DNA of 64,000 bases from Macrostomum lignano. Taxonomy: Eukaryota. Below the pieces are notes generated by a model. That model did no database searches. It saw only the letters and a program-made list of their open reading frames with translations, and was not told the DNA's origin. The translations under genes and the position numbers were made by a program. The stretch is taken from contig NIVC01003890.1 in NCBI GenBank assembly GCA_002269645.1, positions 1 through 64,000 on the forward strand, written 5' to 3'. This document shows positions 4,001-64,000 of the stretch, piece by piece. Within the stretch, counting starts at the first letter, position 1; each line of letters starts with the position of its first letter.

Positions 4001-6432
4001 CCATTTCAATTTTTCACTCAAAAATTTGTCTCGTACTGCCGATTCCAATCGACGCAAAGGAGTCTCCAACAGCGAACTAATTGTTTCCTCGAGCTCGTTC
4101 GTCTCGTCCGCATTTTTTTCTACTTGTTGCTGCAATCGCTCAGCTCTGGCTGAGCCGCCTTCTTGCTGTGCCGCCTCGAAATTCACTTCATTGTCAGACT
4201 GCATTTCGACAATCATACCTTCTACTTGATGAGCATAACCATCTTCAGGCAGATGTAGCAACGCATCATTATTCATTGAAACCTGATACTGTCTAAAGTA
4301 CTTGTTGTTTGCCATTAAATAGCGCATCGCATTAGTCACTTTGTCGCGTCGAACTCGCAAATTGTTCATTGTGCCGCTTTGCGCTTCTCCAGGCTGAACA
4401 CGGGCTCTTTCGTCGTACATTAAAACAACTGGCAGAGATCGTCTTGGCAGCTCTCGCAAAACGTGCGACTGATCTTGAGGCAACATGATTCCGTGTCCTC
4501 TCGATTTTGTTTGCTTTTGGGGAAAAATTTGTACCACAACAATAACCGACAAAACTGGCGAAATCAACATTTGCTCTGCTACACTCAAATCTTGCAAATC
4601 TTCTGGCTGCTCCAACATCGGAATCGCATTGTTTTCTTGGCTAAACGATTTCGGCTCATTGTCATCTCTGAAACAACGATCGCACATGTCTTCAGAATCG
4701 ATGCTAAAATATTTTCCAGGAAACTTTTCCCTACACACGTAGCACTGTTTCAAATGTGATACTTTTGTTATGTTTTCATTGAAAAAGTCTTGCCTCATCT
4801 TTTTGAACTGGTCTGTGAACGGATTGCGAAGGCACTTTGGCAGATTAGGATCTCCGATTTCATCTTCAACAATTGGAGCATCTTGAGCGCTCTCTTCTGA
4901 AGTGCTGCTCTGCGGAACATTTTCTTTAGCTGGCTGCTGCTCCATTGTAGGCCGCTTTCTGGGTGACGAACGGATCGCTTCATCAGGCTTCTCCTGAGTA
5001 GCACGTGTCTTTCGTGGTGATGAATACGTAGAAGTAGCTGGAATATTATCAGACTGACGTTTATCTTGCTGCTCCTGCTGCAAAGGTGCCGTCTTCCTAG
5101 GCGACGATCGAACGGGTTCGCAGATATGATTTTCTGCGTTTGTCAATCTCTGTTTCCGTGGTAAAGAATTTGCATAGTTGACCACTTGCTGCTGGTTTTT
5201 CAAACGCTCGCTGCGACGAGTAGGAGCACTTGGTACAACGTCGCTCTTCTTTTCTCGACCTCTTCCTTTTTCCAAATGGCAAGAAACGCTTGAAACCGCC
5301 GAAACTGAGTCGCCACAACCGATGCAACTGCAACATGGTGCTCTCCGAGTGCGACTGCTTCTTCTCAATAAGCTCTGACCAGATACACTAGAGGCTGCAA
5401 CAGACACAGACTCTAATGTGTTTGCTTTAGCGCTCAGTCGACTACTCCGACGCGTAGCGCAACTTGCCTTCCCAACATCCTTTTTACGCCGACTGCGCCG
5501 CGGAACATTTGATGGCACGGACTCTGACACACGATCACTTTTAACTGACTCTGACACATGCTCAATTTCAACTGACTCTGCGCTATCCTCCGCGTCAAGA
5601 TCGACATTCCAATTCCAGACAGAGTTGTTCCGATCCCGAAGCACTTCATATGAATTCGGATGCGCAAACAAACTCGTATTATTTTCCAAGGACTTTGCTT
5701 GATTTCTACAACGTCCCTTCCAATGCCTACTTTGAACTCGGGTCCAGTCTGCAACCTTTTCAAAAGGCGTCATTGGTGGAGCTGGAGGTGGCATCATTAC
5801 AACAGGATCTTCGACAACATGAACATTCTCGTTGAGAGGGGGCATTTCCACATTCTTGGCGCTCAAATCTCCTTGGCCAGTCGGCCGAACTGAGCTTGCT
5901 TCATTAACTTCCAAATCATTGACACGAACGATTTCGTAGTGTTGACTACCAGGATTAAACAACAATCGAATAGTAGCCAAACGTTCTCCAATATTCGGTC
6001 GGGAATAATGGCCAGGCCGCGCTAGATTAAGCATGTTTGACTGATAAATAAACACTTCTAGCCGCAACAGTTCACCAATTAGTTCTGGAACTCCGCATGG
6101 CACGTACATACGGGGACGCCTTGTATCGTCGCGCACTTTTTCCCAATTCAGTCCTGTTTGCATAATTCTTTCCTGATTATTGACATCGCGATGCACCCAT
6201 TGCTCGAATTCTGCAGCAACCGCATCTCGAAAATCTTCTACGCTTAGCGATTGATAGGCGGAAAAACCTGGCAGTTCTTGTAATTGTCTCAATATGGCCG
6301 TGAAAAAACAGTTGCCGTCACCTCGTACATTCTCAACGCGACACGAAGAAAAAGGAACCCATACAGGTTGGACTTGTACAGCAGCAGTTACATGACCTTC
6401 GGCAAAATCCATTGCAGTAGCACCTGTTTCAT
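941..6432 (-). CDS. Helitron RepHel main exon: OTU-like cysteine protease, Zn-finger-like CxxC pairs, HUH Rep, PIF1 helicase (N-terminal part)
   Basis: 1835-aa ORF; OTU VRGDGNCFF...QHYEIV; acceptor TTTTACAG before 6432 is in phase with the upstream exon. Confidence 0.9.
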
Positions 6433-6617
6433 CTGTAAAAGAATACAACTCTTAAACAGTGAGGTATGATAATTTTAAGGAATTGAGCATTAATTGTATT
6501 TTGCACAAGTCGTAAACACTAAAATCTAATTTTCAATATTCGCAAGCAAAGTCAGATGTAAGAAAGAAAATTAACTTGTACTATGCATAGAAATTCAATA
6601 AAAAATAAAACTCTCAC

Positions 6618-15666: not shown

Positions 15667-17477
15667 GGGATCACGCGGCGGACCCGAATTTAATGCTGAA
15701 GAAGAACCGCAGACCACTGTGTACATTGGAAACCTGCCTAGCGACTCAATTCAAGGCGATGTTGAGCACATTTTTAGCGCCTGCAAAATCCGCAGCATTC
15801 GGATGGTTCGCGACAGGGAGACTGACGCGTTTCGCGGCTTTGCGTATGTGGAGTTCGAGGACACGGTCTCTGTGAAAAAGGCTCTGGAGCTGAATGGCGC
15901 TGTACGTGACCTTGATTTGATTCTTTTATTGATTTTTTGGACTAAAGGATGATTTTCAGATTGAACTGCCTGCCACTTGCATCCCCTCTCAGATCCTCAG
16001 ATTGAACTGCCTGTCACCTGCATCCCCTCTCAGATCCTCAGATTGAACTGCCTGCCACCTGCATCCCCTCTCAGATCCTCAGATTGAACTGCCTGTCACC
16101 TGCATCCCCTCTCAGATCCTCAGATTAAACTGCCTGTCACCTGCATCCCCTCTCAGATCCTCAGATTGAACTGCCTGCCACCTGCATCCCCTCTCAGATC
16201 CTCAGATTGAACTGCCTGTCACCTGCATCCCCTCTCAGATCCTCAGATTAAACTGCCTGTCACCTGCATCCCCTCTCAGATCCTCCGATTGAACTGCCTG
16301 TCCCCTGCATCCCCTCTCAGATCCTCAGATTGAACTGCCTGCCACCTGCATCCCCTCTCAGATCCTCAGATTGAACTGCCTGTCACCTGCATCCCCTCTC
16401 AGATCCTCAGATTGAACTGCCTGCCACCTGCATCCCCTCTCAGATCCTCAGATTGAACTGCCTGTCACCTGCATCCCCTCTCAGATCCTCCGATTGAACT
16501 GCCTGTCCCCTGCATCCCCTCTCAGATCCTCAGATTGAACTGCCTGCCACCTGCATCCCCTCTCAGATCCTCAGATTATAAATCTTTAGTTTAGACAATA
16601 AAACAAATGAAAAACTTTACCTACACGTTCATTTCAGCTCTACGATGGCAAAGAGTTGAAAATTGACGTTGCCCAAAACCGCAATAGAAATGGCGGATTT
16701 CGAGGCGGTAAGAGTCTTTTGTGTCTTCTGCATTAAATATTTTACTCTTCTCCTACTTAAAGTAAAGAAATAATTAAAAGCTCAGTCCATCTACTTACAG
16801 TAGAAAAAGCAGGATTTATTACAAGTGCAAAATGCATAACAACCGCAGGTCGCGGCGGCGGCGGCGGCCCTCACCAACACCACGGCAACATGCGAGGCGG
16901 CGGCGGCAGCGGCTTTCAAAACTATGGCGGCGGCTCCATGGAGTTCACCAGGGGCGGCGGCCGCGGCGGCCGAGGAGGCGGCGGTCGCGGCCGCGGCGGT
17001 GGGCCCGGCGGGCCGCCCCAGTATCAGCAGAATTTCCAGCCCCCCTATCATCATCATAATCAGCCAAATTATTATCCGCCCCAGCATCACAGCCAGGGCA
17101 ATGGCCGCGGCGGTCGAGGCGGCGGTCCGCCATTTCACGGCGGAGGTGGCGGTGGCGGCCCGCCATTCCAGGGTGGCGGCCCGCCATTCCAGGGCGGCGG
17201 CCCGCCATTCCAGGGCGGCGGCCGACGCCAGCGCCAGGGCTCCAGCGGCGGCGGCGGCCGCAAGTCTGAGTCATCTTCGCCGCCTCCCCCGCCAGCCCCC
17301 GGCCGTCCGAAGCTGAAGCTGCTGCCCCGGACAGTGGCCGAACCGGTAAACGCTGAGCCACCTCGTAACTCCTCGATTTTCGGGTCTGGTCGGCCGCGCC
17401 CACCGACGCCGCCGAGCGCTGAACAGTCTGGCGACAGCGGCGCCGCCGAAGGAGGCGCCGCTGCTCCTAGCGAGTGA
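15667..17477 (+). CDS. EIF4H: Eukaryotic translation initiation factor 4H (exons 15667-15901, 16638-16707, 16849-17477; start exon not located)
   Basis: RRM with TVYIGNLP...RGFAYVEFED...LKIDVA; C-terminal RPKLKLLPRT...SSIFGSGRPR typical of eIF4H/4B; splice phases consistent. Confidence 0.85.
15955..16577. repeat. 41-bp intronic minisatellite, ~15 copies
   Basis: Unit ATTGAACTGCCTGTCACCTGCATCCCCTCTCAGATCCTCAG. Confidence 0.95.
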
Positions 17478-20936: not shown

Positions 20937-23900
20937 ATGTTCAAACCGTCTGGTTCATCTGACGAATTCGGTTCGGCAATGCGCGGGTTGAAGTGAGTGC
21001 AACTTTGATGTTAATATTTTAATCTTTCTGTATTATATCCATATTTTAAATGCTATGATGTACCCAAGGCCAAAGTCATTTAAGTTTTTACCTCTTAATT
21101 ACGTCACAAATCTTTTTAAAACCAAGGTTACCAATCGTGGAAAGTTCCACAAGAAACAAGGTGACCAATCGTCGAAATTTCCACAAAAATCAAGGTCACC
21201 CATCGTGGAAAGTTCCACAAGAAAAGTCACGACTCGTGGAAAGTTCCACAAGAAACAGGGTCATGAATCGTGGAAAATTCCACAAGAAACAGGGTCACCA
21301 ATCGTGGAAAGTTCCACAAGAAACAGGGTCACCAATCGCGAACTTTTAAAGTTTCAATAAATAATTTCACAAGTCAAGGCCATGGAAAGCTCCCTTAGAG
21401 TCAAGGTCACCCTTAACCGCACCCGCCTTAATCCGCAGGGGCTCCCGAACGCCCGGCCTCCGCCTGTCGGCTCGTCCGAGTCGTCGTCCGAGCGGCAGCT
21501 CCAGCTCGAATGCCGGAGAGCTCAGCATCGCTGGACCAGCCTGGATTGTGCGCGGCCAGGAGGTGGTGAAGGACGAACCGGCCAAGGTGATCAAGTACCC
21601 GGAGCTGCACTCAGACCTGGCCAGGTAAAATACATATCCATTCATTCTGGTTCGAAGGCCGATTGGGTTGTCGTGCAAGGCTACCAGACATTTCCCCTCG
21701 GGCATTTCCCCCTCCGGCGTCCGGAGTTCATAAGCCCGTCGTGAAATTCTCGTTAATGAGGGCCCATTGAGTCGCTTAGCTCGTGCAACCTACTCGTGAA
21801 ATAAAACGCAATTTTCAGGTCCTACAACGAGCAAATCAAGCCGTGCTACGATCAGATTGCTAAACTACGAGCCCTCGGCTTTGCCAAGGAGCTCCGACTG
21901 CCATCCATCGTGGTGATCGGCGATCAGTCAACCGGGAAGAGCTCCGTTCTTGAGAGCATCAGCGGAGTTCGATTCCCGCGCGGCAACGGCGTTGTGACGC
22001 TCTGCCCGCTGCAGCTCAGCATGCGGACCAGCGATGACGGCAAGTGGCGCGGCAACATTCGCTACTACGACACCTACGGCAAGCTGATGAAGTGGGACAT
22101 CGACGGGCCAGAGGATGTCGAAGACGCCATTCAGGAAGCGCAGATGCGCATTACCGGCAATCAGCGCAACGTATCGAAGAGCATCATCGAGATGACGTTA
22201 GAAAGTCCGGAGTTGCCGAATTTGACGTTGATCGATTTGCCAGGCATTGCCAGGTACAATCACAACAGTGCGGAGAGCGGGAGCAGCCTGCACCAGCTGG
22301 TGAGTAGCCGATGGTTTCTGAGAAAGTGCCGCTATTGCCCATACCCAGAAATAAAGTTTTTGGAAAAAAGAAGATGCTTTGAAGTCTTAACCTTTAAAAG
22401 TTGGTTTCTTTGAAAGGTTTCCTTCTCAGAAGGCGTTAAAATAGTAGAAAGTTTTTTAGAGTTTCCTAGAAAACGTGGCTTTGCAAGAAAGCATGGCTTT
22501 TCTATAAAGTGTGGCTTTCATAGAAAGCGTGGCCTTTCTTAGAAAGCTTGGCCTTCCTAGAAAGCGTGGCCTTCCTAGAAAGCCTGGCTTTTCCTAGAAA
22601 GCCTGGCCTTTCCTAGAAAGCGTGGCCTTCCTCGAAAGCCTGGCTTTTCCTAGAAAGCCTGGCCTTTCCTAGAAAGCGTGACCTTTCCTAGAAAGCGTCG
22701 CCTTTCCTAGAAAGCCTGGCCTTTCCTAGAAAGCGTGACCTTTCCTAGAAAGCGTCACCTTTCCTAGAAAGCGTGGCCTTACCTAGAAAGAGTGGCCTTT
22801 CCTAGAAATCGGGGCCTTTCCTAGAAAGCGTGGCTTTTCTATAAAGTGTGGCTGGCTTTCCTTTTAAGTGTGGCTGTCCTAGAAAGTGTGGTTGTAATCT
22901 TTTTTTTCACAAGTCGTAGAATTTCTCAAAAATGAGAATGTAAAAAAGTTACGTTGCAGGAGCTGAAATGATTTTTTTGATTCTTAGACCGAGAAAAATT
23001 TTGTAAGAGTAATTCTTTCAAAAATTAGTCAGGCATTGAGATTTCAAAAAAAATACAATTTCGCACGTTGGTTGTAAGTCCTTAACTTTAAAACAGCATT
23101 TACATCAAAAACTATATTCGCACTCTGCCAGACAACAGACATCATCAAAGAGTACATCAGACGCGAGGAGACAATCATTCTGGTTGTGATTCCGCTGACT
23201 TCCGACACCGCCACAATGGAGGCACTGCAGCTGGCTAAGGACGCCGATCCCTACGGAATGCGCACAATTGGTGAGGTTCTCACATTTCAGACACTAAATT
23301 CATTCTTTCTTCGTGTCTAGACTACTGGTAGTAGCTCGAATGGAGCAACATACCTGAAGAAATTTAGATACATGTGAATTCCCTGGCTAGACGGTTTGAC
23401 AATTTGAAAAAACCTAGACCGGACACTGCTATTGCTGGTGAATCTTCTGAACTGTTGCGATTCAAAATCGTTAACAAAAACTTTTTACCCCAACTCAGGC
23501 GTGCTCACCTTTCCTGACCTGGTGAACAAGGGCGCCCAGGAGGAGAAGCTGATGATTGCCAGAAACATCACCTACCCCCTGTCTAAGGGCTACGTCACTG
23601 TCAAATGCCGGAATCAGGAAGATATTAAGAATCGCAAATCGCTAAAGGACGCAAAGGCTGACGAGGCTTTGTTTTTTAACACTGACCCGTTCTTTAAACA
23701 ACTGGACTCGATGTACCGAGGCTCCGATACGCTTGCTAGGAGATTGAGCGAGGAGCTGTTGTACCTCGTTAAGGTAAGACTTCTGTTACCCCGGTATAGA
23801 TAATTGCAAAATCGTCTAAATTAACTTTGATTCGTGCGTAAGTCCTCTGTTCTACAGAGCCTGGCATCAATGGGGTTGGGTGCGTGCCCAGTCCCCCAGC

Positions 23901-26900
23901 CCGGCGTCAATGGGGTGGGTGCCCCAGTCCCCCAGCCCTGCATCAATGGGGTGGGTGCCCCAGTCCCCCAGCCCGGCGTCAATGGGGTGGGTGCCCCAGT
24001 CCCCCAGCCCTGCATCAATGGGGTGGGTGCCCCAGTCCCCCAGCCTAGCGTCAATGGGGTGGGTGCCCCAGTCCCCCAGCCCGGCGTCAATGGGGTGGGT
24101 GCCCCAGTCCCCCAGCCTGGCGTCAATGGGGTGGGTGCCCCAGTCCCCCAGCCTGGCGTCAATGGGGTGGGTGCCTCAGTCCCCCAACCCGGCGGCGCCA
24201 ATGGGGTGGGTGCCTCAGTCCCCCAGCCCGGCGTCAATGGGGTGGGTGATCTAGTCCCCCAGCCCGGCGTCAATGGGGTGGGTGATCTAGTCCCCCAGCC
24301 CGGCGTCAATGGGGTGGGTGCCCCAGTCCCCAGCCCGGCGTCAATGGGGTGGGTGCCCCAGTCCCCCAGCCCGGCGTCAATGGGGTGGGTGCCCCAGTCC
24401 GGTGTCCCTGGGGTGGGTGCCCCAGTCCCCCAGCCCGGCGTTAATGGGGTGGGTGCCCCAGTCCCCAGCCCGGCGTCAATGGGGTGGGTGCCCCAGTCCC
24501 CAGCCCGGCGTCAATGGGGTGGGTGATCTAGTCCCCCAGCCCGGCGTCAATGGGGTGGGTGCCCCAGTCCCCAGCCCGGCGTCAATGGGGTGGGTGCCCC
24601 AGTCCCCCAGCCCGGCGTCAATGGGGTGGGTGCCCCAGTCCGGTGTCCCTGGGGTGGGTGTCCCAGTACCCCGATTCCTGAGTCACAAGCAGTTTTTCCA
24701 CCTATTAATTCGCCTTATTCTTCTCTGCAGAAATTCATCCCGGAACTCATTAGCGATGTGCAAAGCGTACGCGAGCGACTGGGCCAAGAGCTGGCCCAGA
24801 TGGGCAAAGGTCCGCCCGAGGACGACCGCTCGAAGGTGGCCCTGATTGCCAGAATGTTTAACGACTTTACCAAACTATTCGAGAAAGAGGCCTCAGGTAT
24901 GAGGTTCTAAAATGTGTCCAAATCCTACTAAGAAACTCTAGGGCACTAGGGCACAGTTAGTCAAGGCGGCGATGCGACCCCCCTCCCGACTAACTTATCC
25001 GCAGGCAAGTCGCACAACTTCCAAGAGGACTCCGGCAAGAAGAACCTCCACCAGCGCTGCCGACAGCACTGGTGCAATCTGGCCGAGCAGATTGAGAAAA
25101 CTGTGCGCCAGATCGGCGACGACGACGCCAAAATTCGCAAAGCCGTGCGCGACTTTTTGGACGATCAGCGCGGTCGCGAACTGCCTAACTTTCAGTCGGC
25201 TTACCCGGTCATCGAGTGCATCATCCGCCAGCGACTGGTGGCGCCGCTGCGTCAGCTGGCGTTGCACTGCCTCCGGGATGTGAGCGTCGAGGTTGACGAC
25301 ACGCTGAGGGATCTGGCTGACTCGGTTTTCACCTCCTATCCGAGGCTCAATCAGTATGTTAAGGTAAGTGTCTCCTGTGAGACATCAGTGACATTACAGC
25401 CGATGCTTAATTAAGAATGAATGACTCATGGGCTGTGTACACTGGTGCATGCTTTGGTTATTTAGACGAACGACTCATTGGCTGTGTACACTGGTGCATG
25501 CTTTGGTTATTTAGACGAACGACTCATTGGCTGTGTACACTGGTGCATGCTTCGGTTATTTGGACGAATGACTCATTGGCTGTGTACACTGGTGCATGCT
25601 TCGGTTATTTGGACGAATGACTCATTGGCTGTGTACACTGGTGCATGCTTCGGTTATTTGGATGAATGACTCATTGGCTGTGTACACTGGTGCATGCTTC
25701 GGTTATTTGGACGAATGACTCATTGGCTGTGTACACTGGTGCATGCTTCGGTTATTTGGACGAATGACTCATTGGCTGTGTATACTGGTGCATGCTTCGG
25801 TTATTTGGACGAATGACTCATTGGCTGTGTACACTGGTACATGCTTTGGTTATTTGGACGAATGACTCATTGGCTGTGTACACTGGTGCATGCTTTGGTT
25901 ATTTGGACGAATGACTCATTGGCTGTGTACACTGGTACATGCTTCGGTTATTTGGTCGAATGACTGGTCTACAGCGGTGGTAGCCAAACAATTTCTGACA
26001 AAACAGCTGCAATCGTGAGTCATCTCCAAACAAAACCGCAGGAGTCTGTGCAGGGCATCAAAGAGCGCATGTACTCTCGGGCCAAGGACGATCTAGATCG
26101 TCAGTTCGACCAGGAGAGCTACGTGTGGACCAACGATTTGACATTCGACGATGAATCCAACATACGCGAGGCTACCCGCTCTCTGGTGATGAACGTTATG
26201 GTGCTGCCGAATCGGAATATGTACTCTTTCACTGAGCAGTTCAACCGCCAATCCGTGGAGTGGATCGCTGACCATTGTTGTCGTGAGTGTGAAATGATTA
26301 TTTCATTTGTTTAAATTAAATTAAATTAAATTAATATCACGCAACTAGCTACTAAAGGAGAAATAGAAGAATATTACGCAACAAATTGAACACAGAGTCC
26401 ATGCACTTTTCATCTAGGTCCTGAGGACGAGTCTAACACGGAGTTCGCTGCCTGGTTTCAAGGCATTTTTCAGCGTAAGGGCACTTTTTCTATTTGTATC
26501 CCAAATACTACGCGTACACCTCTATAAAATCCTGTCATAAGCAGCACGTGTACTTTAAAATACACAGAGTACTTCAGCCAGAGCTCCGCGTCACAAGACG
26601 AGAAGGCATCCGGCCCGAAATCACCTCGCGGCGCCGATCACGAGCCTGATGAAGCCATCGAAAGGTGTCTAAACTCGTTGCACGCCTACATGAAGGTGAG
26701 TTAGAATAGTTTTGCATTGCAGTTCTTAAAATATGCTAAGAGAAAGCATTTCGAAGACTTTTGTTTTGTTTCTTTAAATAGAACTCTGTTCTGACGTCAG
26801 TCAATTTGTTTCTATAAATAGATTGAACTGTTGTGACGTCATTCTAAATGTTTCTAAAAATAGATCAAAGCTTTTTGATATGCTACGCTCGTATATTGTT

Positions 26901-27218
26901 ATTTAATCCGTATGATAGCGACTCTCTCGAAAAATAGCAAAATAAAATCGATTGAAAGAAATTACTTGCATCTTCACCGCCGAGCAGATCGCCTTCACCC
27001 GCATGATTGACAACGCGCCGCTCTGCATGATGCACTTCATGCTTTACAAGCTGGCCGACGAACTCTGCAACGAGGTCAGCATCTTTCAGCAGGAGTCTGA
27101 GAAGCTGGACCAGCTGCTAGAGGAGAAGGAAGGCATCCGGATTCACCGGATCGAGACTAAAAACCGGATGAAAGCTCTGGCCGAGGCTGAGAACGATCTC
27201 TGCCGCATCTCGCTTTAG
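20937..27218 (+). CDS. Mx: Mx-like dynamin-superfamily GTPase, 11 coding exons (20937-20992, 21439-21624, 21819-22299, 23132-23270, 23499-23773, 24731-24897, 25005-25363, 26042-26282, ~26417-26474, ~26568-26696, 26988-27218)
   Basis: YNEQIKPCYDQIAKLRALG; G1 GDQSTGKSS; FPRGNGVVTLCPL; G3 DLPG; G4 LTFPD; RGRELPNF; stalk/GED SLHAYMKIAFTRMIDNAPL; no PH domain; splice phases consistent. Confidence 0.85.
21115..21340. repeat. ~34-bp minisatellite in Mx intron 1 with palindromic GTGGAA-NN-TTCCAC
   Basis: About 6-7 units of GTGGAAAGTTCCACAAGAAACAGGGTCACCAATC. Confidence 0.9.
22455..22890. repeat. ~19-bp minisatellite in Mx intron 3 carrying TTCCTAGAA
   Basis: Unit TTTCCTAGAAAGCGTGGCC; about 17 TTCNNNGAA by hand count. 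Confidence 0.92.
23865..24670. repeat. 36-bp GC-rich minisatellite in Mx intron 5
   Basis: Unit GTCCCCCAGCCCGGCGTCAATGGGGTGGGTGCCCCA. Confidence 0.95.
25415..25960. repeat. 49-bp minisatellite in Mx intron 7 carrying ATGACTCAT
   Basis: Unit GAATGACTCATTGGCTGTGTACACTGGTGCATGCTTCGGTTATTTGGAC, ~11 copies. Confidence 0.95.
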
Positions 27219-27999
27219 ATTGGACAAGCTCGCGCGACGAATGTTTCGATACATATCGGTTCTATATCTTTAATCCATTTTTAAAAACCTTGTGGTACAC
27301 CAAGAATTTCGCTATTATCGAATTCTGATTAAACTTCTTTTATCGTCGTGTACTAATTAATATATATTCGCCTTTGATGCTGTTTTGACTCATATTAACA
27401 ATTTTATTTCGTCATGACCCGGGCATTGCTATCATAGTCTAATGTTAGATTTTGTTCTGTGTTATAACATCTTTAAATTTTCAATAATTGTGATACAAAA
27501 TTGTCAAACGAAACTTTTAGAAAACTTGCTTAAAAATTGTTTTTAATAAATAAAAGTGCTCATAAATCTATTAAAATCTATGATTATTAATGCTGTTAAT
27601 TTCTTATATACTTGTTCAATATTTTAGTTCTAAACTTACGTCAGTCTACTTTTTGTAGGTCTGCTGCGCGCATGTTTCGTTCGAGTTTACACAGTCAATA
27701 TCAGTCATTAGTGAACTTTATAATACTACTAAATTTATACAGTTGAGGTACATGAGGACTTTACCTACATGTTTATCCCACGGCTATCAAATAATTCAAA
27801 CTGTTTATTTGCGTGCTTTTGATAATAGGTGCCTGACAGGGCCCATTGATAAGGGGCAAAGGAGTGTAGGCCAAGGGAAAGGTTAGCTAGTGACCAAGTG
27901 AGGGATGAGAGTTAAAGATAAAAGAGAATTAAAAAAAACAGCCTAACAGACAGACAGGCAGGCACGAAGCCACTGAGACACCGAGAAACTAATTCACTA

Positions 28000-28955
28000 A
28001 GATACTAATGCACTAATAAGATACTGATGCACTAAGATACTAATACACTAAGATACTAAGGCACTAAGATACCAATGCACTAATAAGATACTAATGCAGC
28101 GGAATGGGCGCCCGCGCCTTCCCGCTGTGTCCCCTCCGGGACAGCCCTGCAGCTAAGATACTAATGCACTTGACACTAAGACACTAATGCACTAGACACT
28201 AAGGCACTAATGCACTAATGCACTAGACACTAAGGCACTAATGCACTAGACACTAAGGCACTAATGCACTAGACACTAAGACACTAATGCACTAGAAACT
28301 AAGGCACTAATGCACTAGACACTAAGACACTAATGCACTAGAAACTAAGGCACTAATGCACTAGACACTAAGACACTAATTCACTAGAAACTAAGGCACT
28401 AATACACTAGACACTAAGGCACTAATGCACTAGAAACTAAGGCACTAATACACTAGACACTAAGGCACTAATGCACTAGAAACTAAGGCACTAATACACT
28501 AGACACTAAGGCACTAATGCACTAGAAACTAAGGCACTAATGCACTAGACACTAAGGCACTAATGCACTAGACACTAAGGCACTAATGCACTAGACACTA
28601 CGGCACTAATGCACTAGAAACTAAGGCACTAATGCACAAGACACTAAGGCACTAATGCACTAGACACTAAGGCACTAATGCACTAGAAACTAAGGCACTA
28701 ATACACTAGACACTAAGGCACTAATGCACTAGACACTAAGGCACTAATGCACAAGACACTAAGGCACTAATGCACTAGACACTAAGGCACTAATGCACTA
28801 GAAACTAAGGCACTAATACACTAGACACTAAGGCACTAATGCACTAGACACTAAGGCACTAATGCACTAGACACTAAGGCACTAATGCACTAGAAACTAA
28901 GGCACTAATGCACTAGAAACTAAGGCACTAATACACTAGACACTAAGGCACTAAA
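28000..28955. repeat. 23-bp minisatellite
   Basis: Unit CACTAATGCACTAGACACTAAGG. Confidence 0.95.
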
Positions 28956-29439
28956 ACCGACAGTCATCAGTAACGCAAGGAATTGATACAATAAAGATAA
29001 AGACAAAATATAATCGATTGCGCACATACAAGACTTTTCATTTTTAGTATAATTGAAGAGATTTAGTATATTTAGATTGAAAGATAAAATTGACTTGTTT
29101 AACTTTTACTTCGCTCGTATGCACGATTCTAAGAATCAAACTAATTTTGTATGATGCGGGAAATTTTCGTCTCGTTAAAGTTTGCAACCTTTGCAAAATG
29201 GCTTAGTGCGTCTTCATACTAGGTCTCAGACATGCATAAGTCGATATATTCTGTGAATAAATTTGTATGACATTAATACCAGTTACCATTTTTATAAAAT
29301 ATTTATTGCAACAGAGGGCAGTTACAGGAAACATTTTGAGAGTTTTTAATCACCTTTGAGTCTAATCAGGATCAAGTTTGAGTCTAGATAAATAACAATA
29401 AGACAGAGTTTTGAGGCCGGGTTTCGGGTCCAGATTGAG

Positions 29440-29830
29440 ACAGGGTTTGAGTCTAGATTGAGACAGAGTTTGAGTCTAGATTGAGACTAGTTTTGAGTCT
29501 AGATTGAGACTAGTTTTGAGTCTAGATTGAGACTAGTTTTGAGTCTAGATTGAGACTAGATTGAGACTAGTTTTGAGTCTAGATTGAGACTAGTTTTGAG
29601 TCTAGATTGAGACTAGTTTTGAGTCTAGATTGAGACTAGTTTTGAGTCTAGATTGAGACTAGATTGAGACTAGTTTTGAGTCTAGATTGAGACACGGTTT
29701 GAGTCTAGATTGAGACCAGTTTTGAGTCTAGATTGAGACACGGTTTGAATCTAGATTGAGACCGGGTTTGAGTCTAGATTGAGACACGGTTTGAGTCTAG
29801 ATTGAGACCGGGTTTGAGTCTAGACAGAGA
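29440..29830. repeat. 23-bp minisatellite
   Basis: Unit TTTTGAGTCTAGATTGAGACTAG. Confidence 0.93.
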
Positions 29831-29935
29831 CAGTATTTGGGGACACTTAGGTGTTGGTTTGAAGTTAATTAACATCATGTTTGAGTCCGATTGACATGAA
29901 GAAGCATGAGTAGCAACAAAAACATTTTTTAATCA

Positions 29936-30568
29936 TCAGGACGACTTTGAGTAGAGATCGAAGCTGCTCTTCATCGCTTTCCCAGCCGGCTCGTCCTCCA
30001 CAGTGCCGATGTCCAGACTCTTGATGAACCTGGCCACGTGCACCACAGTGGGGTGGCTCAGCAGGTAGATGAACACAGACATAGTTGTCAGGATGCCGAG
30101 AGCATTGAACAGGATTGCCAAGCTTCCGTACAGAGCCGCTCGTTTATGCGACTGCTCGTCTTTCTTGTTCGCCAGCAGATTGTGCGCCCGCACTGACAAG
30201 GCTACGGCAATGGCGCCGAATATGAAATTGAAAAATATTGTCACAATCACCGACACAACAAAATTGGTGACTCGATTCTTGTTGTTTGTCTCGAACTCCA
30301 TGGGCAGCAGGCGAGGGACCCCGAGCTGTTTGGTTAGGGGAGCCTCCGGGACCGCCTCGACCGCATCAAGTTCCATCGGAGTCTGCCTTTGCTGCGGCTG
30401 CTGTTGCTGCAGAAGAGGCAAACGACTGCTTGACTCTGCTTCAGTGGATTGAAGCAGCGGATGGTTCATTAGACGAACCGACAGGAGACTGCTTGCCGCT
30501 GTCACGTCTGCGGCAGCGCCAACGCCTGCAGGATCTGCGTACAAATTGTTGTCAGGCAGTTCCTGCAT
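29936..30568 (-). CDS. CD225/dispanin (IFITM/PRRT-like) membrane protein, 210 aa, single coding exon
   Basis: Two hydrophobic segments FVVSVIVTIFFNFIFGAIAVALSVRA...AALYGSLAILFNALGILTT with CD225-like spacing; acceptor CTGCAG just before the ATG. Confidence 0.65.
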   Translation of the reverse strand: MQELPDNNLYADPAGVGAAADVTAASSLLSVRLMNHPLLQSTEAESSSRLPLLQQQQPQQRQTPMELDAVEAVPEAPLTKQLGVPRLLPMEFETNNKNRVTNFVVSVIVTIFFNFIFGAIAVALSVRAHNLLANKKDEQSHKRAALYGSLAILFNALGILTTMSVFIYLLSHPTVVHVARFIKSLDIGTVEDEPAGKAMKSSFDLYSKSS

Positions 30569-30931
30569 CCTGCAGCGGAGAGGCTGGAGATTGCAAGAGT
30601 AAACAGGTGGAGGGAGACAGGGAGATGAAGCTTAATATTCTATGAAATGCATATTTTCAGCAATTATTGCATCCCTCTTCCCTGACTGTACAGTGTTGAG
30701 TTGTATGCATTTGTTGCTAATAGAACTTGGGTTGGTGGCTGTTCATTAAGCGTGGCCAATAAAATCCGGAAGCAGAGAGCGGCTCTTTCCCAAATTCCAG
30801 CTCTTCATCTAGCGCACAAAATATCTGCAAATTTTGGCCTCTTCTTTTGCTAAATTATTTTGTATTTCCATAAATACTTCCCAGCGATTAGATACTGAAT
30901 CATATTCACCATCTCAAACTTGACATATCAT

Positions 30932-35988: not shown

Positions 35989-38900
35989 CTACTTTCTACC
36001 ATAGACGTCGAGGCTTCGGGCCCGGTCGAGAGCCTGGCGGAACAGCTGGTGCTCGCGACGCTCTCGCAGCTGGCAGGGCACAAAGCCGCGCATGTCGGCC
36101 AGGGTCTCAAGCTGATCAGCCAATGGTATGACCACCGGAGAACTCCGAGTGAGCAGCTGAATGTAGGCATTGCCTTCTAAGTCGGGCAGTAGATAGGCGT
36201 AGTGCAGCGGGGTTAGGCCTTCCTGTTTAAGGTTTGGAAATATGAAATATGAAATATGAAGGAATTGAAGGAAGAAATATCCATAAATATTCCATAAAAT
36301 TCTAAATTATCCTACTCTAAGTAGACAAGCTGCGAATATTCTATCGGAAATTTTCTTACATTATCGGCCATAGCCGCCTGCTGGGGCCGTTCGGCCAGAA
36401 TCCACAGCGCCATCTCGTAGCGATTGCAGGCGACCGCCCGAATCAGCGCCGAGTAGCCGTTGACATCGCGATAGTCGACTTCGTTCAGAGCTTTCATCTT
36501 TTCCAAGTCGTCTTGGCGGATGGCTTCAAAAAGCTCGCCGCACGATTTCTATAATGTATTTAAATTGCAGATGTGCACTCGCTGGGAAGGAAAGTGAGGC
36601 ACCAGAGGCGCCAGCACCAGAGGCGCCAGCACCAGAGGCGCCAGCACCAGAGGCGCCAGCACCAGAGGCGCCAGCACCAGAGGCGCCAGCACCAGAGGCG
36701 CCAGCACCAGAGGCGCCAGCACCAGAGGCGCCAGCACCAGAGGCGCCAGCACCAGAGGCGCCAGCACCAGAGGCGCCAGCACCAGAGGCGCCAGCACCAG
36801 AGGCGCCAGCACCAGAGGCGCCAGCACCAGAGGCGCCAGCACCAGAGGCGCCAGCACCAGAGGCGCCAGCACCAGAGGCGCCAGCACCAGAGGCGCCAGC
36901 ACCAGAGGCGCCAGCACCAGAGGCGCCAGCACCAGAGGCGCCAGCACCAGAGGCGCCAGCACCAGAGGCGCCAGCACCAGAGGCACTAGAGGCTCCCTGG
37001 CTAAAACCCTGAAGTACTACCGGTTCCCAGATACTAGAAGTGCATTTACTGAACTCACCTCAACCAGCTGAATGCGGCTGAGAAACTGCTCCTTCACGGG
37101 ATCTTTTGAGCCGCTAGTCGGGCCGAAATTCGCCGCCCCATAGAAGTTGGTTGCCAGCGTCATCAGGAGGCCCTTAGCTGGGCGGGACTTCGACTGGCGA
37201 AACAACTCGTCGATCACCGAGTCCATGGCTTCGGCGAGGTCGCGACGTCCCAGCCGGACGGCCATCTCGCGCGGAGTGCGCAGCTCGCAGGAGAACGGCA
37301 GCCGGTCCTTCAGCAGCAGGACGTTCTGGCCTTGACGAGCCTGCAGGACTCTGACGAAGTGCTGCGGCCGGATGTCGGTGCGGATCAGGCGGTGCAGCAT
37401 TGTGAAGCCATCCTGCGTTGTGCAGATTGGAGGAGGAGTGCTTGTAACTTTGTAGGAAGATGCAGGACTTCAATATTTCAAGGCAAACAAACATCATAAC
37501 AAACAATCATCAAGACAGACAACCATCAAGACAAACAATCACCAAGACAAACAATCACCAAGATCAACAATCAACAAGACGAACAATCAACAAGACAAAC
37601 AACCACCAAGACAAACAACAACAAGACAAACAACAACAAGACAAACAATCACCAAGACAAACAACCACCAAGACAAACAATCAACAAGACAAACAATCAC
37701 CAAGACAAACAATCAACAAGACAAACAATCACCAAGACAAACAACAAAAAGACAAACAATCACCAAGACGAACAATCAACAAGACAAACAATCAACAAGA
37801 CAAACAATCACCAAGACAAACAATCAACAAGACAAACAATCAACAAGACAAACAATCACCAAGACAAACAATCACCAAGACAAACAACCACCAAGACAAA
37901 CAATCACCAAGACAAACAATCAACAAGACAAACGATCAACAAGACAAACAATCACCAAGACAAACAATCAACAAGACAAACAATCACCAAGACAAACAAT
38001 CAACAAGACAAACGATCAACAAGACAAACAATCACCAAGACAAACAATCTGTTAAATCGACTAACTCTTCGAAACCGAAAAATAACTAAGTAGGCAAAAA
38101 TCGGATGCTTGTAGGCTTCAATACCTCTGCGTTCTCGCGCAGGCAAAGCAAAACAACCAAGTTAGCAAAAAACACGCTGACCAAAAATCACGCCCTTTTT
38201 AATTATTATTTAACGTGGGGTGGGGTTAGCAAATCGAGGGGGGTTGGCTCATGTACATTAAATAAAGAGCAAATACATGTACAATTAAATAAGTAAAACC
38301 CCAAAAATATGACAAAAAATGAACCTCCAGAACATTCCCCCTTCCTGATTGGGGCCAATCAGCAAAAAAGCAGAAAAAAAAATTGCCTCCTTGAAACTTA
38401 CGTGCAATTAATTGAAACGGTTGCAAGCATAATTCGAAAAAACAGTAAACTCCTGTAAACAAAAAAATAAATCGCGCGAAATCAGAAATTAACATTAAGA
38501 ACGCATGCAATGTGAAGTGTCAATTGGGATCAAAAGATAGTGTGCCAAATATAAACCTTTGCAATCGCTAGCCAACACAAAAAATCTCTGCTAAGAAACG
38601 AACACAAACGAACTCAAAGATGCTCAAACGATAATTAGTGAAATAACACGGGATGAAAAATGTCTTGAAAACTTAAATAATCCCTACTGTAAACATATGA
38701 AAAATATCAAAGCACAAAAACTGCCAAAAGAACTCGCATTCAAGCAAGCAACAGGTCTTTTTACTCAGAATAAAAAAACACAAAATACGCAAAAATAAGC
38801 AATCCATCACCACTTCAGCTATTAGGAGCAAAAAACGGCAAATAATGACACGAAAAAGATAAATAATTCCAAACACCATAAACTAGCCGTCAAAAAACTA

Positions 38901-41900
38901 CATATTTGAAAAGTTTTGTTTAGCAATAAGTCAACAGTCACTATTCACCTCGCTGCAGCACACACAACTTCGTCACGGGTCGCAGCACTGTCCCACCGCC
39001 AGTCCGCACCTTGGCCACGCGCACATGGCCGTCTCGTCCAGGAAATACCTCGAGAACTCGCCCGAGCGGCCAGTGTCCTCGAGGCGCATCCGCTCGTAGC
39101 GCCAAGACGATGTCGCCGACGGCGAGATCCGGCTGCTCCTTGACCCACTTGGATCTGGCGTTGAGTCTTGGCACCCACTCACGCAGCCATCGGTGCCAGA
39201 AGTGCCGCACCAGCTCTTGGACACGTCGCCACCGCCGGCGCGGGTCGCGGCTGACCTCGGTCGAGACTTCCGTAGCAAAGTCACCACCCAGCTGTCCATG
39301 CAAGAAATGGTTTGGCGTCAACGGCGTGTCGTCCTTTGGGCTTGCGGTTTGGTATGTCAGCGGCCTGGAATTGATGAGCGCTTCCGCACCTGTGAAGGCG
39401 GAATGCAGCTCTTCGTCGGTGATGTCAGCGTTGCTAAGGATGGCGCGCACAGCTCGCTTAGCGGCGCGAACCATAACTTCGTGGGCGCCGCCGAAATGGG
39501 GCGCCGACGGAGGCTGGAAGCGCCACTTGATGCCGCGCTCAGCTGCCGCTCTCTGGATTTTGTTCTGCTGCTCGTTTTCGAATTCTCGTAGTTCTCGCTC
39601 GCCTTTGACAAAGTTGCCGCCGTTGTCCGAGTAAACTTCGAGTGGCCGGCCTCTACGGTTGATCATGCGCGCGAAAGCATTCAGAAACGAGTCAGAATCC
39701 AAGCTATACGCCATCTCTAGGTGCACGGCTCTCGTCTCCAAACAGGTGAACAGGGCCAAATACCTCTTCGTTCGCCGTCTTCCGCGTCCTTGTACCGTTT
39801 CAAACGGACCACCGAAGTCGACTGCCACAAAGCTGAACGCTCGGAGAGAGTTCTTCAGCCTGGCCTCTGGCAGCGGCGCCATCTGCTGCACCTCCGGTCC
39901 TGCTTTTTGCCTTCTGCATCGCGCGCACTCCTTCTCCCATTCTCGAATGGCTTCGCGCCCACCGATCACCCAAAACTTCGTCGACATCGCTGCCAGCGTC
40001 TGGTTTGTTCCGCCATGTCCTTGATCTTCGTGATAGTGCTTCACCAACAACTTCGTGACCCAACTTCGCCTCGGCAGAATGACCGGATGCTTGGACTGAT
40101 ATGACAGATTCTGGTCGAACTTCAGTCTTCCGTCCACTCGCAGCAGTCCGTCTTCATCAAGAAATGGTTGGAGACAGCGAAGCTGACTGCTGGAGAAGAC
40201 TGGCTTTCCCCTACGCACCTGCTGAACTTCTGCTTTGAAAGCTTCTTCCTGAGCCACGCGTAGGATTCGATCCTCAGCTTCTTGCAGCTCCTCGACCTCG
40301 AGGTCACCAAGTCGTCTCTCATCTCGTGGAAGTCGGCAATTACTGATGAAGCGCTGAACCCATGCTGTCACGCTACGCAGCCTGCGGTAGCTCGAAAATC
40401 GCTCTGGATTCAAACGACAATCGTTGTCTGTGGTGTCGTTCGACAACAGAGTTACGGCCGCCGATTTACTACTCTTGCTCGCCTCTCGCCGAACTTCTTG
40501 ATCTCCGTCAACCGATGTCGGAACTAGCCTTGCCGGCCAGCCATCCTCATCTAGCAGCAGAAACTCTGGTCCCGCGCTCCAGACCGCTGATTGGCAAAGG
40601 TCTTTGGCGCTACAGCCTCGCGATACGGCATCAGCGGGGTTCAGATCGGTCGGCACGTGACGCCACTGACAAGTCTTCACCGCCTCCTGAATGAACGCAA
40701 CACGATTTGCTACGAACGGCTTGAAAATTCTACTGCGACCTCGAAGCCACCAGAGCACATTTGCACTGTCACTCCAGAACACCGACTCTCTCAGGTCTAA
40801 ATCGAGCGCATCTGCCACCGTCTGGGCAAGTCGCACGCCAAGCACCGCCGCCATGAGCTCGAGTCTGGGGATGCTGCATGCTGCCAATGGAGCTACACGT
40901 GCTTTTGCGGCTACAAGACGAACACAGATTTCGTCCAGGCTTGTGGCGCTCCTGAGATAGATTACCGCGCCGTAAGCCACCTGAGATGCATCCACAAAGA
41001 CGTGTAGCACTGCCTTTTTGGTAGGATCAGGCCATAGACATCGTGGAATTTTCAGCATGCTCAACTCTTCAATCTCCGCTGCCCATTGCGTAGCCTTCGC
41101 GGCAACTTGCTGGTCCAAGGGCTCATCCCAATCCGCTCCATTCTGCCAAATCTCCTGCAGAAGAATTCGCCCGCGAATTGTAAATGGACTCAGAAACCCG
41201 CATGGGTCGAACACCATCGCAACGCGCTTGAGCAGCTGTCGTTTCGACTCAACGGACACTTCCTTCGCACCTGCATTTCCCGTGATCGCGAGCATATCAT
41301 CATTGGCTGTCCAAGTCACTCCCAACGCCTTCGACGTCGCCATTTCTCCACGAAGCACGTGCTGCGCTTTCACCGCTCGATCCTCCGGAGCTACTGTCTC
41401 CAACACCTCAGACGCGTTCGACATCCATTTTCTCGCACGCATGCCGGCTTTTTCCCACAGAGCTGTCAGTTCGCGGCGCAACTGGATAGCTTCATGGACG
41501 CTGTTCACCGAGTCCAAACTGTCGTCCATGTAGGTCGACTTCAGAATGGTTTCTGACGCTCTTGGAAAAGTTTCCTGATGACTCCTAGCATGCTCCTGCG
41601 ACACGAACTGAGCAAGAAACGGCGAACAATTAACTCCAAAAACGACACTCTGAAACTCGAATACCTCAGGTTTGCCCGTTTCGTTCCTGTCTCGCCACAA
41701 AAATCGAAAGTAGCGCCGATCTTCTGGCTTGAGGCGAATTCTAAGGTACATCTCTTCAATGTCGCAAACGATTGCCACTGGACCGCGACGGAATCGAAGG
41801 AGCACTTGAAATAGGTCGTTCTGAAGCTTCGGTCCTGGAAGGATGACGTCATTGAGACTCACTCCTTGGCAGCGCGCGGAAGCATCAAACACGATACGGA

Positions 41901-56293: not shown

Positions 56294-64000
<7,707 letters not shown>

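What the first reader, a model, noticed from the sequence alone, without database searches (positions are those of the whole stretch)
20937..30568. Candidate invertebrate antiviral locus: Mx-like GTPase tail-to-tail with a CD225/IFITM-like gene
Seen: an intact multi-exon Mx-like gene and, 2.7 kb past its stop, a convergent CD225-type membrane protein gene. Established: vertebrate Mx and IFITMs are interferon-stimulated restriction factors, and Mx-like genes also occur outside vertebrates. Inferred: in an animal that probably lacks interferon, these two may form a co-regulated antiviral module, possibly with the neighbouring ankyrin-repeat gene.
Basis: partly seen in the sequence, partly recalled or inferred. 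Interest (0 to 1): 0.7.

Follow-up and report, generated by a model that had tools for sequence, protein, structure and literature searches.

The report
Flatworm Mx gene beside CD225-like gene
This stretch of a Macrostomum flatworm genome holds an intact, already published Mx-type GTPase gene and, 2.7 kb downstream on the other strand, a small unannotated membrane-protein gene only distantly related to CD225/IFITM proteins. Nothing found here shows the two work together.

Summary
Window 20937-27218 (+) is an intact Mx-clade dynamin-like GTPase gene of 11 GT-AG exons encoding 772 aa. It is 98.7% identical to Macrostomum lignano PAA94353.1. That protein already sits inside the Mx clade in a published phylogeny (Langley et al., PNAS 2025), which reports at least six Mx genes in this flatworm.

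An intronless 210-codon ORF lies 2,717 bp past the Mx stop, convergent, at 29936-30568 (-). It encodes a two-helix membrane protein. It is a real gene by conservation: 98.3% nucleotide identity to a second genomic copy against about 88-95% in flanking DNA, no indels, dN/dS about 0.26. It has small homologues in monogenean flatworms.

Its link to CD225 rests only on consistent sub-threshold Pfam matches (20-26 bits; threshold 27.1). It has no cysteine, G-D motif, loop GxxxG or conserved loop intron. It is therefore a divergent flatworm dispanin, not an IFITM.

It is absent at two other M. lignano Mx loci, at Owenia and amphioxus Mx loci, and at both monogenean homologue loci. Convergent genes separated by minisatellites cannot share a promoter or an operon. 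Co-induction remains untested. The finding is ordinary and of low interest.

The parts
20937..27218 (+). Mx-clade dynamin-like GTPase gene. The 11 exons are 20937-20992, 21439-21624, 21819-22299, 23132-23270, 23499-23773, 24731-24896, 25005-25363, 26042-26282, 26418-26474, 26568-26695 and 26988-27218.
   Evidence: Exon model and GT-AG introns. 772 aa, 762/772 identical to P0001/PAA94353.1. Pfam Dynamin_N, Dynamin_M, GED. Best homologues are all Mx. PDB Mx2 323 bits against dynamin 175. dN/dS 0.10 against L001.
21439..21624 (+). Exon 2 (186 nt, 62 codons, Ser/Arg/Pro-rich N-terminal extension). It is used in the annotated M. lignano model. Skipping it keeps the reading frame.
   Evidence: AG/GT borders and in-frame translation. 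Present in P0001.
21819..23773 (+). Exons encoding the G domain. G1 GDQSTGKS is at 21919-21942. The G4 box reads T-F-P-D at 23507-23518, a position where the lysine is almost universal.
   Evidence: Pfam Dynamin_N. Motif alignment. K at this G4 position in 108 of the 120 best hits, with the exceptions being all nine Macrostomum sequences (F or C) and Owenia (R).
23499..27218 (+). Exons for the middle/stalk region and the GED. Exons 9-10 (26418-26695) encode a Ser/Gln/Asp/Glu-rich insert just before the GED helix, the likely counterpart of the Mx stalk loop.
   Evidence: Pfam Dynamin_M and GED. No PH-domain hit. The PDB alignments to Mx stop at query residue 553 of the 710-aa model. Loop assignment is inference.
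21123..21338 (.). Minisatellite in Mx intron 1 (34 bp x 6.4). It carries five Rel/NF-kB-like decamers; a sixth lies just outside at 21384-21393.
   Evidence: TRF. Pattern scan. 13 such decamers in the same intron of L001. Copies of a tandem repeat are not independent events.
27219..29935 (.). Intergenic spacer of 2,717 bp between the two stop codons. Much of it is minisatellite: 27984-28098, 28174-28954 (23 bp x 34) and 29411-29833 (23 bp x 18).
   Evidence: TRF. Array lengths differ from L001.
29936..30568 (-). Intronless ORF of 210 codons. It encodes a divergent CD225/dispanin-like protein with two hydrophobic helices and no cysteine.
   Evidence: ORF. Pfam CD225 21.1 bits, below threshold. 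Conserved in L001 at 97.6% aa and 98.3% nt with no indels, dN/dS 0.26. Flatworm homologues. Hydropathy. Not annotated in GCA_002269645.1.
30065..30268 (-). CD225-like domain (residues 101-168): first hydrophobic helix, basic loop, second helix.
   Evidence: Pfam stretch 101-168 against profile 4-67 of 68. One nonsynonymous and six synonymous differences against L001 within it. AlphaFold2 gives a helical hairpin with core pLDDT 70-82.
30570..30575 (-). CTGCAG behind a pyrimidine-rich tract, ending 1 nt before the ATG. It fits the [T/C]TNCAG motif reported at M. lignano spliced-leader trans-splice acceptors.
   Evidence: Sequence. Motif: PMC8629364. Actual use as an acceptor is inferred, not shown.

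Best explanation
The window is nuclear DNA of Macrostomum lignano or a very close relative. It carries two independent host genes that happen to be neighbours.

Gene 1 is one of the flatworm's six or more Mx-clade dynamin-like GTPases. By homology it should bind guanine nucleotide, assemble through its stalk and GED into oligomers, and use nucleotide-driven conformational change against viral nucleoprotein targets. Its antiviral role is inferred from the family, not shown.

Gene 2 is an unannotated, intronless member of a flatworm-restricted, very divergent branch of the CD225/dispanin superfamily. Most likely it is a small hairpin membrane protein that modulates vesicle or membrane-fusion events or a membrane partner, as non-IFITM dispanins do. 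It is not an IFITM-type restriction factor.

The tail-to-tail adjacency is incidental. Each gene has its own promoter on opposite outer sides, and minisatellites fill the space between them.
For: Organism and gene 1:
- The product is 98.7% identical to PAA94353.1.
- The window is about 93% identical in DNA to NIVC01000012.1.
- All best non-self hits are Mx, and PDB scores separate Mx from dynamin by about 150 bits.
- In the published trees PAA94353.1 pairs with PAA83069.1 (100/100) inside a monophyletic M. lignano Mx group next to Owenia, Saccoglossus, lancelet and vertebrate Mx.
- Purifying selection: dN/dS 0.10.

Gene 2 is real:
- There are no indels, and nucleotide identity is 98.3% against 88-95% in flanks. 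Differences are 6 synonymous to 5 nonsynonymous.
- Homologues of 124-172 aa were found. The three that carry names are from the monogeneans Cichlidogyrus and Protopolystoma. There they are called as single-exon genes.
- A trans-splice-type acceptor sits 1 nt before the ATG.

Gene 2 is CD225-like but divergent:
- All eight family members tested have CD225 as their top Pfam hit, at 20-26 bits. Five match across nearly the whole profile and three match only its first half.
- Two members carry PF04505 in precomputed annotation.
- No cysteine, no G-D motif, no loop GxxxG, no loop intron (against features in PMC3282796 and PMC7665892).

Adjacency is incidental:
- No CD225-like sequence lies within 10 kb of the Mx paralogues at L002 and L005, or of Mx in Owenia L006 and Branchiostoma L007.
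- No dynamin-family gene lies near the monogenean homologues.
- M. lignano operons need genes in the same orientation (PMC8629364).
- There is no ISRE consensus anywhere in the window.
Against: - Expression was not examined, so co-induction is untested.
- The adjacency is retained in both near-identical copies (window and L001), though at about 4-6% synonymous divergence that is expected by descent alone.
- Both superfamilies contain antiviral members.
- The Mx intron-1 minisatellite carries arrays of Rel/NF-kB-like decamers. These could be regulatory.
- Only three of at least six M. lignano Mx loci could be inspected.
- The trafficking role assigned to the CD225-like protein is by analogy only.
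- The profile of the flatworm family did not reach any canonical CD225 protein in the large databases.
Confidence: 0.75

Rival explanations
1. Mx and the CD225-like gene form a co-regulated antiviral module in an animal without interferon, possibly together with the ankyrin-repeat gene.
For: - Both superfamilies include vertebrate restriction factors.
- The pair is kept in two genomic copies.
- Both genes are under purifying selection.
- Rel/NF-kB-like decamers cluster in Mx intron 1.
Against: - The linkage is absent at two other M. lignano Mx loci, at Owenia and Branchiostoma Mx loci, and at monogenean loci of the CD225-like family.
- Convergent orientation with 2.7 kb of minisatellite leaves no shared promoter, and operons need the same orientation.
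- The protein lacks cysteines, the loop GxxxG and the G-D motif.
- The ankyrin exons (45239-47354) lie beyond a 7-kb retrotransposon.
- There is no ISRE consensus in the window.
Confidence: 0.07
2. The 210-codon ORF is not a functional gene. On this view it is a chance or decaying open frame whose CD225 resemblance reflects only generic hydrophobic-hairpin composition.
For: - It is not annotated in GCA_002269645.1.
- It is absent from the 15-billion-protein collection.
- The Pfam score is below threshold.
- No PDB or Foldseek match was found.
- Only 11 substitutions support the dN/dS estimate.
Against: - It is indel-free at 98.3% identity, while neighbouring noncoding DNA is at 88-95% with indels.
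- Within the domain there are 6 synonymous differences against 1 nonsynonymous.
- Homologues reach E 1e-15 to 1e-9 and share 12 invariant positions. The named ones are from other flatworms.
- CD225 is the top Pfam hit for all eight members.
- A splice-acceptor motif lies next to the ATG.
Confidence: 0.08
3. The Mx paralogue here is no longer a guanine-nucleotide-driven machine. Loss of the G4 lysine in all Macrostomum Mx proteins would mark a shift to a nucleotide-independent or altered-specificity scaffold with a non-antiviral cellular role.
For: The G4 box is T-F-P-D or T-C-P-D in all nine Macrostomum sequences, while 108 of the 120 best hits have K.
Against: - G1, the switch-I threonine, G3 and the G4 aspartate are all intact.
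- There is strong purifying selection.
- The family has expanded to at least six genes, a pattern the published study links to host-virus conflict.
- Owenia tolerates R at the same site.
Confidence: 0.1

Closest known systems
Macrostomum lignano Mx protein PAA94353.1 (BOX15_Mlig014920g1) and the metazoan Mx clade (Langley et al., PNAS 2025, PMC11789081)
   Same: 762 of 772 residues are identical, with the same 11-exon structure in contig NIVC01000012.1. The architecture is Dynamin_N + Dynamin_M + GED with no PH domain. Scores to solved Mx1/Mx2 chains are about twice those to dynamin or DRP1.
   Different: - The window copy differs by 10 residues and about 6% at synonymous sites. It is therefore a second allele, a homeologue or a sister strain rather than the deposited sequence.
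- Unlike almost all other Mx proteins retrieved, the Macrostomum proteins lack the G4 lysine.
- No interferon system is expected in this animal, and no ISRE consensus is present.
- Antiviral activity has not been shown for any flatworm Mx.
Non-IFITM dispanins / CD225 superfamily (PF04505; DSPC/DSPD-type proteins such as the SynDIG/TMEM90 and PRRT groups)
   Same: - Two hydrophobic helices joined by a short basic loop, and a long N-terminal region of about 100 aa.
- The A-x6-A pattern at the loop/helix-2 junction, and a conserved glycine in helix 2.
- CD225 is the top Pfam hit across nearly the whole profile.
- The 2012 dispanin survey found that invertebrate dispanins resemble DSPC/D rather than IFITMs.
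   Different: - Scores are below Pfam's gathering threshold in every member.
- No G-D motif and no aspartate before helix 1.
- No double cysteine: none at all in the window protein.
- No intron in the loop.
- The C-terminal tail is about 39 aa rather than under 10.
- A profile of the family finds no canonical dispanin.
IFITM3 and the IFITM (DSPA) subfamily
   Same: Only the superfamily-level hairpin topology and the CD225 profile resemblance.
   Different: - The IFITM subfamily arose within vertebrates according to the dispanin survey.
- The window protein has no cysteine to palmitoylate. The survey reports that modification as required for IFITM3 antiviral activity.
- It has no loop GxxxG, the motif tied to IFITM3 oligomerisation and restriction.
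- No IFITM appears among any search results.

Membership tests
Mx clade of the dynamin superfamily | Dynamin-type G domain with intact G1, switch-I threonine and G3 | tested here: met
   GDQSTGKS, the GVVT threonine and DLPG are all present and align with vertebrate and invertebrate Mx. Dynamin_N E 8.4e-26.
Mx clade of the dynamin superfamily | Canonical G4 box T/N-K-x-D | tested here: not met
   The box is T-F-P-D. The aspartate is kept and the lysine is lost. The same loss (F or C) occurs in all nine Macrostomum sequences, while K is present in 108 of the 120 best hits.
Mx clade of the dynamin superfamily | Middle/stalk domain plus GED, without PH, Fzo or proline-rich domains | tested here: met
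   Pfam finds Dynamin_M and GED only, with no PH hit on any exon. Domain criteria are as used in PMC11789081.
Mx clade of the dynamin superfamily | Phylogenetic placement with Mx rather than Dyn, Drp1, Opa1 or Mfn | tested here: met
   No tree was built here, because the tools gave no outgroup sequences. Three lines support placement:
- The 98.7%-identical PAA94353.1 lies in the Mx clade of the published IQ-TREE files.
- All 111 non-Macrostomum best hits are Mx.
- PDB scores are Mx 309-323 bits against dynamin 175 and DRP1 151.
Mx clade of the dynamin superfamily | Induction by infection or innate-immune signalling, and antiviral activity | not testable with these tools
   No expression data are available. 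No ISRE consensus occurs in the window. Rel/NF-kB-like decamers lie in the intron-1 minisatellite, with unknown meaning.
CD225 / dispanin superfamily (PF04505) | Score at or above Pfam's gathering threshold | tested here: not met
   21.1 bits against 27.1. The seven homologues score 20.1-26.2 bits, all below threshold, but CD225 is the top hit for each.
CD225 / dispanin superfamily (PF04505) | Two hydrophobic helices with a short K/R-rich loop and a long N-terminus | tested here: met
   Hydropathy peaks are centred at residues 108-120 and 157-162. The loop is rich in K, R and H. The N-terminal region is 100 aa. AlphaFold2 gives a helical hairpin.
CD225 / dispanin superfamily (PF04505) | A-x6-A motif at the loop/helix-2 junction and a conserved glycine in helix 2 (PMC3282796) | tested here: met
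   The window protein and five of its seven homologues show A-x6-A around an invariant glycine. A second invariant G-I follows in helix 2. Motif definition.
CD225 / dispanin superfamily (PF04505) | G-D motif in the loop, aspartate before helix 1, double cysteine in helix 1 | tested here: not met
   There is no G-D in the loop. The flank of helix 1 reads N-x-N-R-V-T. The whole 210-aa protein contains no cysteine. Other family members have single cysteines only.
CD225 / dispanin superfamily (PF04505) | Conserved intron between the two helices in eukaryotic members | tested here: not met
   The ORF is uninterrupted here and in L001. The Cichlidogyrus homologues are called as single exons of 375 and 384 nt.
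IFITM (DSPA) subfamily | Orthology to vertebrate IFITMs | tested here: not met
   No IFITM or any canonical dispanin was retrieved by single-sequence or profile searches of the large protein collections or the PDB. The subfamily is described as arising within vertebrates.
IFITM (DSPA) subfamily | Palmitoylated cysteines and a loop GxxxG oligomerisation motif, both tied to restriction | tested here: not met
   The protein has no cysteine and no GxxxG between the helices. Features are from PMC3282796 and PMC7665892.
IFITM (DSPA) subfamily | Interferon or infection inducibility | not testable with these tools
   No expression data are available.

The most novel reading that the evidence does not exclude
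The flatworm-restricted CD225-like family would be an independently evolved membrane-fusion-blocking restriction factor. Its placement next to one Mx paralogue in Macrostomum would then reflect a young, lineage-specific immune gene neighbourhood. The two genes would be co-induced through Rel-type sites such as those in Mx intron 1, in an animal that has no interferon.
Probability: 0.04. Interest if true: 0.65.

Novelty: new member of a known kind. Interest (0 to 1): 0.22.

Why it matters
The Mx gene adds nothing beyond the published demonstration that Mx predates interferon and is expanded in M. lignano. Two small points may be useful.

First, an unannotated, conserved gene defines a flatworm-specific, very divergent branch of the CD225/dispanin superfamily. 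This extends the known range of that fold in invertebrates and should be added to Macrostomum annotations.

Second, all Macrostomum Mx proteins have lost the otherwise near-universal G4 lysine. This bears on how these expanded paralogues bind nucleotide.

If the two genes were shown to be co-induced, the locus would offer a simple entry point into interferon-independent antiviral regulation. Present evidence points away from that.

Tried and rejected
- Whole-ORF search of the 5.8-billion-protein collection with the CD225-like protein gave no hit at E <= 0.01. The exact sequence is not in the collection.
- A profile of the eight-member family, searched against the same collection, returned only the family itself. 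Against the PDB it returned only designed helical repeats, which are spurious. The single sequence against the PDB gave nothing.
- AlphaFold2 on the C-terminal 131 aa with a 7-row alignment gave a moderate helical hairpin (pLDDT 66). Foldseek against the PDB gave no match below E = 1. This is uninformative for so small a fold.
- No Mx-versus-dynamin tree was built, because the tools returned no dynamin or DRP1 sequences. The published tree files and score gaps were used instead.
- The three large proteins in the representative search (P0124, P0126, P0128) match only short stretches repeatedly. They were set aside as compositional matches.
- Short Logan/ENA contigs carrying homologues (L008, L009) gave no clue to organism or transcript status.
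- An ISRE scan found nothing. The window-wide count of kB-like decamers is not above chance (11 against 8.9 expected). The local cluster is a tandem repeat.
- One literature search failed on time-out.
Full report
**What the window is.** The spliced product of the GTPase gene is 98.7-99% identical to Macrostomum lignano BOX15_Mlig014920g1 (P0001 = PAA94353.1). The window aligns at about 93% nucleotide identity to contig NIVC01000012.1 of assembly GCA_002269645.1 (L001), with many differences in tandem-repeat length. Synonymous divergence between the two copies is 0.04-0.06. The window is therefore another allele, homeologue or strain of this free-living flatworm, which is a known hidden polyploid (PMC10468722, abstract). 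The rest of the window fits a repeat-rich animal genome. It contains a Helitron, a BEL/Pao retrotransposon, ankyrin exons, a STRIP/N1221-DUF3402 gene and an axonemal dynein heavy chain.

**The observation.** It holds exactly. The Mx gene runs from the ATG at 20937 to the stop ending at 27218. All introns are GT...AG. With exon 2 (21439-21624) the product is 772 aa, as in the deposited model. Without it the frame is kept and the product is 710 aa. Pfam places Dynamin_N, Dynamin_M and GED on the exons, and no PH domain is present. The second gene is a single ORF at 29936-30568 on the minus strand. The two stop codons are 2,717 bp apart and face each other. Three minisatellite arrays occupy much of the spacer.

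**Is the GTPase an Mx?** Yes, and this is already published. After nine Macrostomum sequences, the 120 best hits in a 5.8-billion-protein collection are all Mx or Mx-like. They come from vertebrates, lancelets, acorn worms, a chiton, Owenia and a tube worm. Against solved structures it scores 323 and 309 bits to Mx2 and Mx1, but 175 to dynamin and 151 to DRP1.

Langley et al. [quoted passage not shown] Their supplementary alignments and trees contain PAA94353.1 itself. It pairs with PAA83069.1 at 100/100 support, inside a monophyletic flatworm Mx group. That group is sister to Owenia and then to Saccoglossus, next to lancelet and vertebrate Mx. I could not build an independent outgroup-rooted tree, because no dynamin or DRP1 sequences were obtainable from the tools. 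The gene is under strong purifying selection: 28 synonymous against 10 nonsynonymous differences to L001, dN/dS about 0.10.

One departure is notable. The G4 box reads T-F-P-D. All nine Macrostomum sequences have F or C where 108 of the 120 best hits have lysine. G1, the switch-I threonine, G3 and the G4 aspartate are intact.

**Is the second ORF a gene?** The assembly annotation calls no gene there, and the exact protein is in no public collection. Four observations argue for a real gene.
- The ORF is kept in L001 without a single indel, at 98.3% nucleotide and 97.6% amino-acid identity. Adjacent introns and spacer are 88-95% identical and carry indels.
- Substitutions are 6 synonymous to 5 nonsynonymous (dN/dS about 0.26). 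Within the domain they are 6 to 1. The numbers are small.
- An exhaustive HMMER scan of 1.84 billion representatives found seven small proteins of 124-172 aa at E values from 1e-15 to 6e-4. They align over the domain and share 12 invariant positions. The three that carry names come from the monogenean flatworms Cichlidogyrus casuarinus and Protopolystoma xenopodis. There they are single-exon genes among housekeeping neighbours.
- The ATG lies one base after CTGCAG behind a pyrimidine tract. This matches the [T/C]TNCAG motif reported at M. lignano spliced-leader acceptor sites (PMC8629364). Use of the site is inferred.

**Is it CD225, and is it IFITM-like?** The window protein and all seven homologues have CD225 (PF04505) as their best Pfam match. 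Five of the eight match across nearly the whole 68-position profile and three match only its first half. Every score (20.1-26.2 bits) is below the curated 27.1. Two members carry PF04505 in precomputed annotation.

I checked the protein against the family features listed by Sällman Almén et al. (PMC3282796).
- Present: the two-helix topology, the basic loop, the long N-terminus, the A-x6-A pattern and a helix-2 glycine.
- Absent: the G-D motif, the aspartate before helix 1, the double cysteine and the conserved loop intron.
- The C-terminal tail is about 39 aa rather than under 10.

The window protein contains no cysteine at all. It therefore cannot be palmitoylated, a modification that survey reports as required for IFITM3 antiviral activity. 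It also lacks the loop GxxxG motif that links IFITM3 oligomerisation to restriction (PMC7665892). A profile of the family reaches no canonical dispanin in the large database or the PDB, and structure search is uninformative.

The fair description is a flatworm-restricted, highly divergent dispanin-like family. 'IFITM-like' is not supported. The dispanin survey also places IFITMs as a vertebrate innovation and finds that invertebrate members resemble the DSPC/D groups.

- No CD225-like sequence lies within 10 kb of the Mx paralogues at L002 (neighbours CIA30 and RRM genes) or L005 (XRN and a metallo-beta-lactamase-fold gene).
- None lies next to Mx in Owenia (neighbours a second Mx and a metalloprotease) or Branchiostoma.
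- The monogenean homologues sit beside DNA polymerase epsilon subunit B and an Arf GTPase, with no dynamin-family gene nearby.

The only other place with the pair is L001, which is simply the same locus at a few percent divergence.

The layout also argues against shared control. The genes converge, so their promoters lie 9.6 kb apart on the outer sides. M. lignano operons require the same orientation and repeat-adjusted gaps under 1 kb. The window has no ISRE consensus. The ankyrin exons (45239-47354, minus strand) lie beyond a 7-kb LTR retrotransposon, and nothing ties them to either gene.

**Most likely mechanism.**
- Shown: an intact, selectively constrained Mx-clade gene; an intact, constrained two-helix membrane-protein gene of a divergent CD225-like family; and an adjacency that is not conserved.
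- Inferred from the Mx family: the Mx protein binds guanine nucleotide (perhaps with altered affinity, given the G4 change), oligomerises through its stalk and GED, and acts on viral nucleoprotein targets.
- Inferred by analogy: the CD225-like protein modulates membrane trafficking or fusion. Non-IFITM dispanins do this, and the CD225 domain has been reported to carry a SNARE-like motif that engages SNARE fusogens (PMC11730294, abstract).
- I put about 0.75 on 'two unrelated neighbours', about 0.07 on a co-regulated module, about 0.08 on the ORF not being a gene, and about 0.10 on the Mx paralogue having changed its nucleotide dependence. The last is not exclusive of the first.

**Novelty and verdict.** The Mx half is already known. 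The CD225-like half is a new, unannotated member, in effect a new flatworm subfamily, of a known superfamily. The proposed antiviral locus is not supported by synteny or gene layout, and remains untested only for expression. Interest is low.

Noticed in passing
window 23507-23518 (G4 box), and P0001-P0008, P0018: All Macrostomum Mx proteins lack the G4 lysine. It is T-F-P-D in six sequences plus the window, and T-C-P-D in three. K occupies this position in 108 of the 120 best hits, and Owenia has R. This may alter nucleotide binding. The published Mx study does not discuss it in the passages read.
   Followed up: partly
window 21123-21393; L001 10114-10631: The 34-bp minisatellite in Mx intron 1 carries Rel/NF-kB-like decamers (GGAAAGTTCC, GGAAATTCCC). 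There are 6 in the window and 13 in L001, against 3.4 expected per 26 kb. These are tandem-repeat copies, not independent sites. Whether the species has a Rel factor was not checked.
   Followed up: partly
window 38050-45040: A BEL/Pao-type LTR retrotransposon with two identical 285-nt LTRs (38050-38334 and 44756-45040). It has one uninterrupted 1929-codon gag-pol ORF (38941-44730, minus strand; Peptidase_A17, RVT_1, integrase zinc domain, DUF1759, DUF5641). No stops or frameshifts were seen in that ORF. It appears to sit inside a 16-bp minisatellite (37479-38049 and 45015-45392), next to the ankyrin exons. The identical LTRs suggest a recent insertion.
   Followed up: partly
window 941-6448 (-): An uninterrupted 1835-codon Helitron Rep/helicase ORF (Helitron_like_N, PIF1, DUF6570). 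Element ends were not mapped.
   Followed up: no
window 45239-45961 and 46851-47354 (-); possibly 37017-37400 (-): Ankyrin-repeat exons on the minus strand. A further minus-strand ORF on the far side of the retrotransposon could belong to the same gene. If so, the element would lie in an intron. This was not tested.
   Followed up: no
window 51157-54380 (+) and 57467-63618 (+): Exons of a STRIP/FAM40-type gene (N1221, DUF3402), followed by the N-terminal part of a dynein heavy chain (DHC_N2). Both are ordinary housekeeping or ciliary genes.
   Followed up: no
window 18000-38500, many sites: There is a very high density of minisatellites with periods of 15-49 bp. Four of the ten Mx introns contain large arrays: 21123-21338, 22462-22891, 23858-24641 and 25419-25965. 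Array lengths differ between the window and L001.
   Followed up: partly
L006 (Owenia fusiformis CAIIXF020000012.1): The Owenia Mx gene has a second Mx gene 4 kb downstream in the same orientation. This is a tandem duplication, consistent with lineage-specific Mx expansion.
   Followed up: no
window 16890-17477 (+): A Gly/Pro/Arg-rich ORF of 195 aa in a 55% GC island, with no Pfam match. It is possibly an exon of an RGG-type RNA-binding protein.
   Followed up: no
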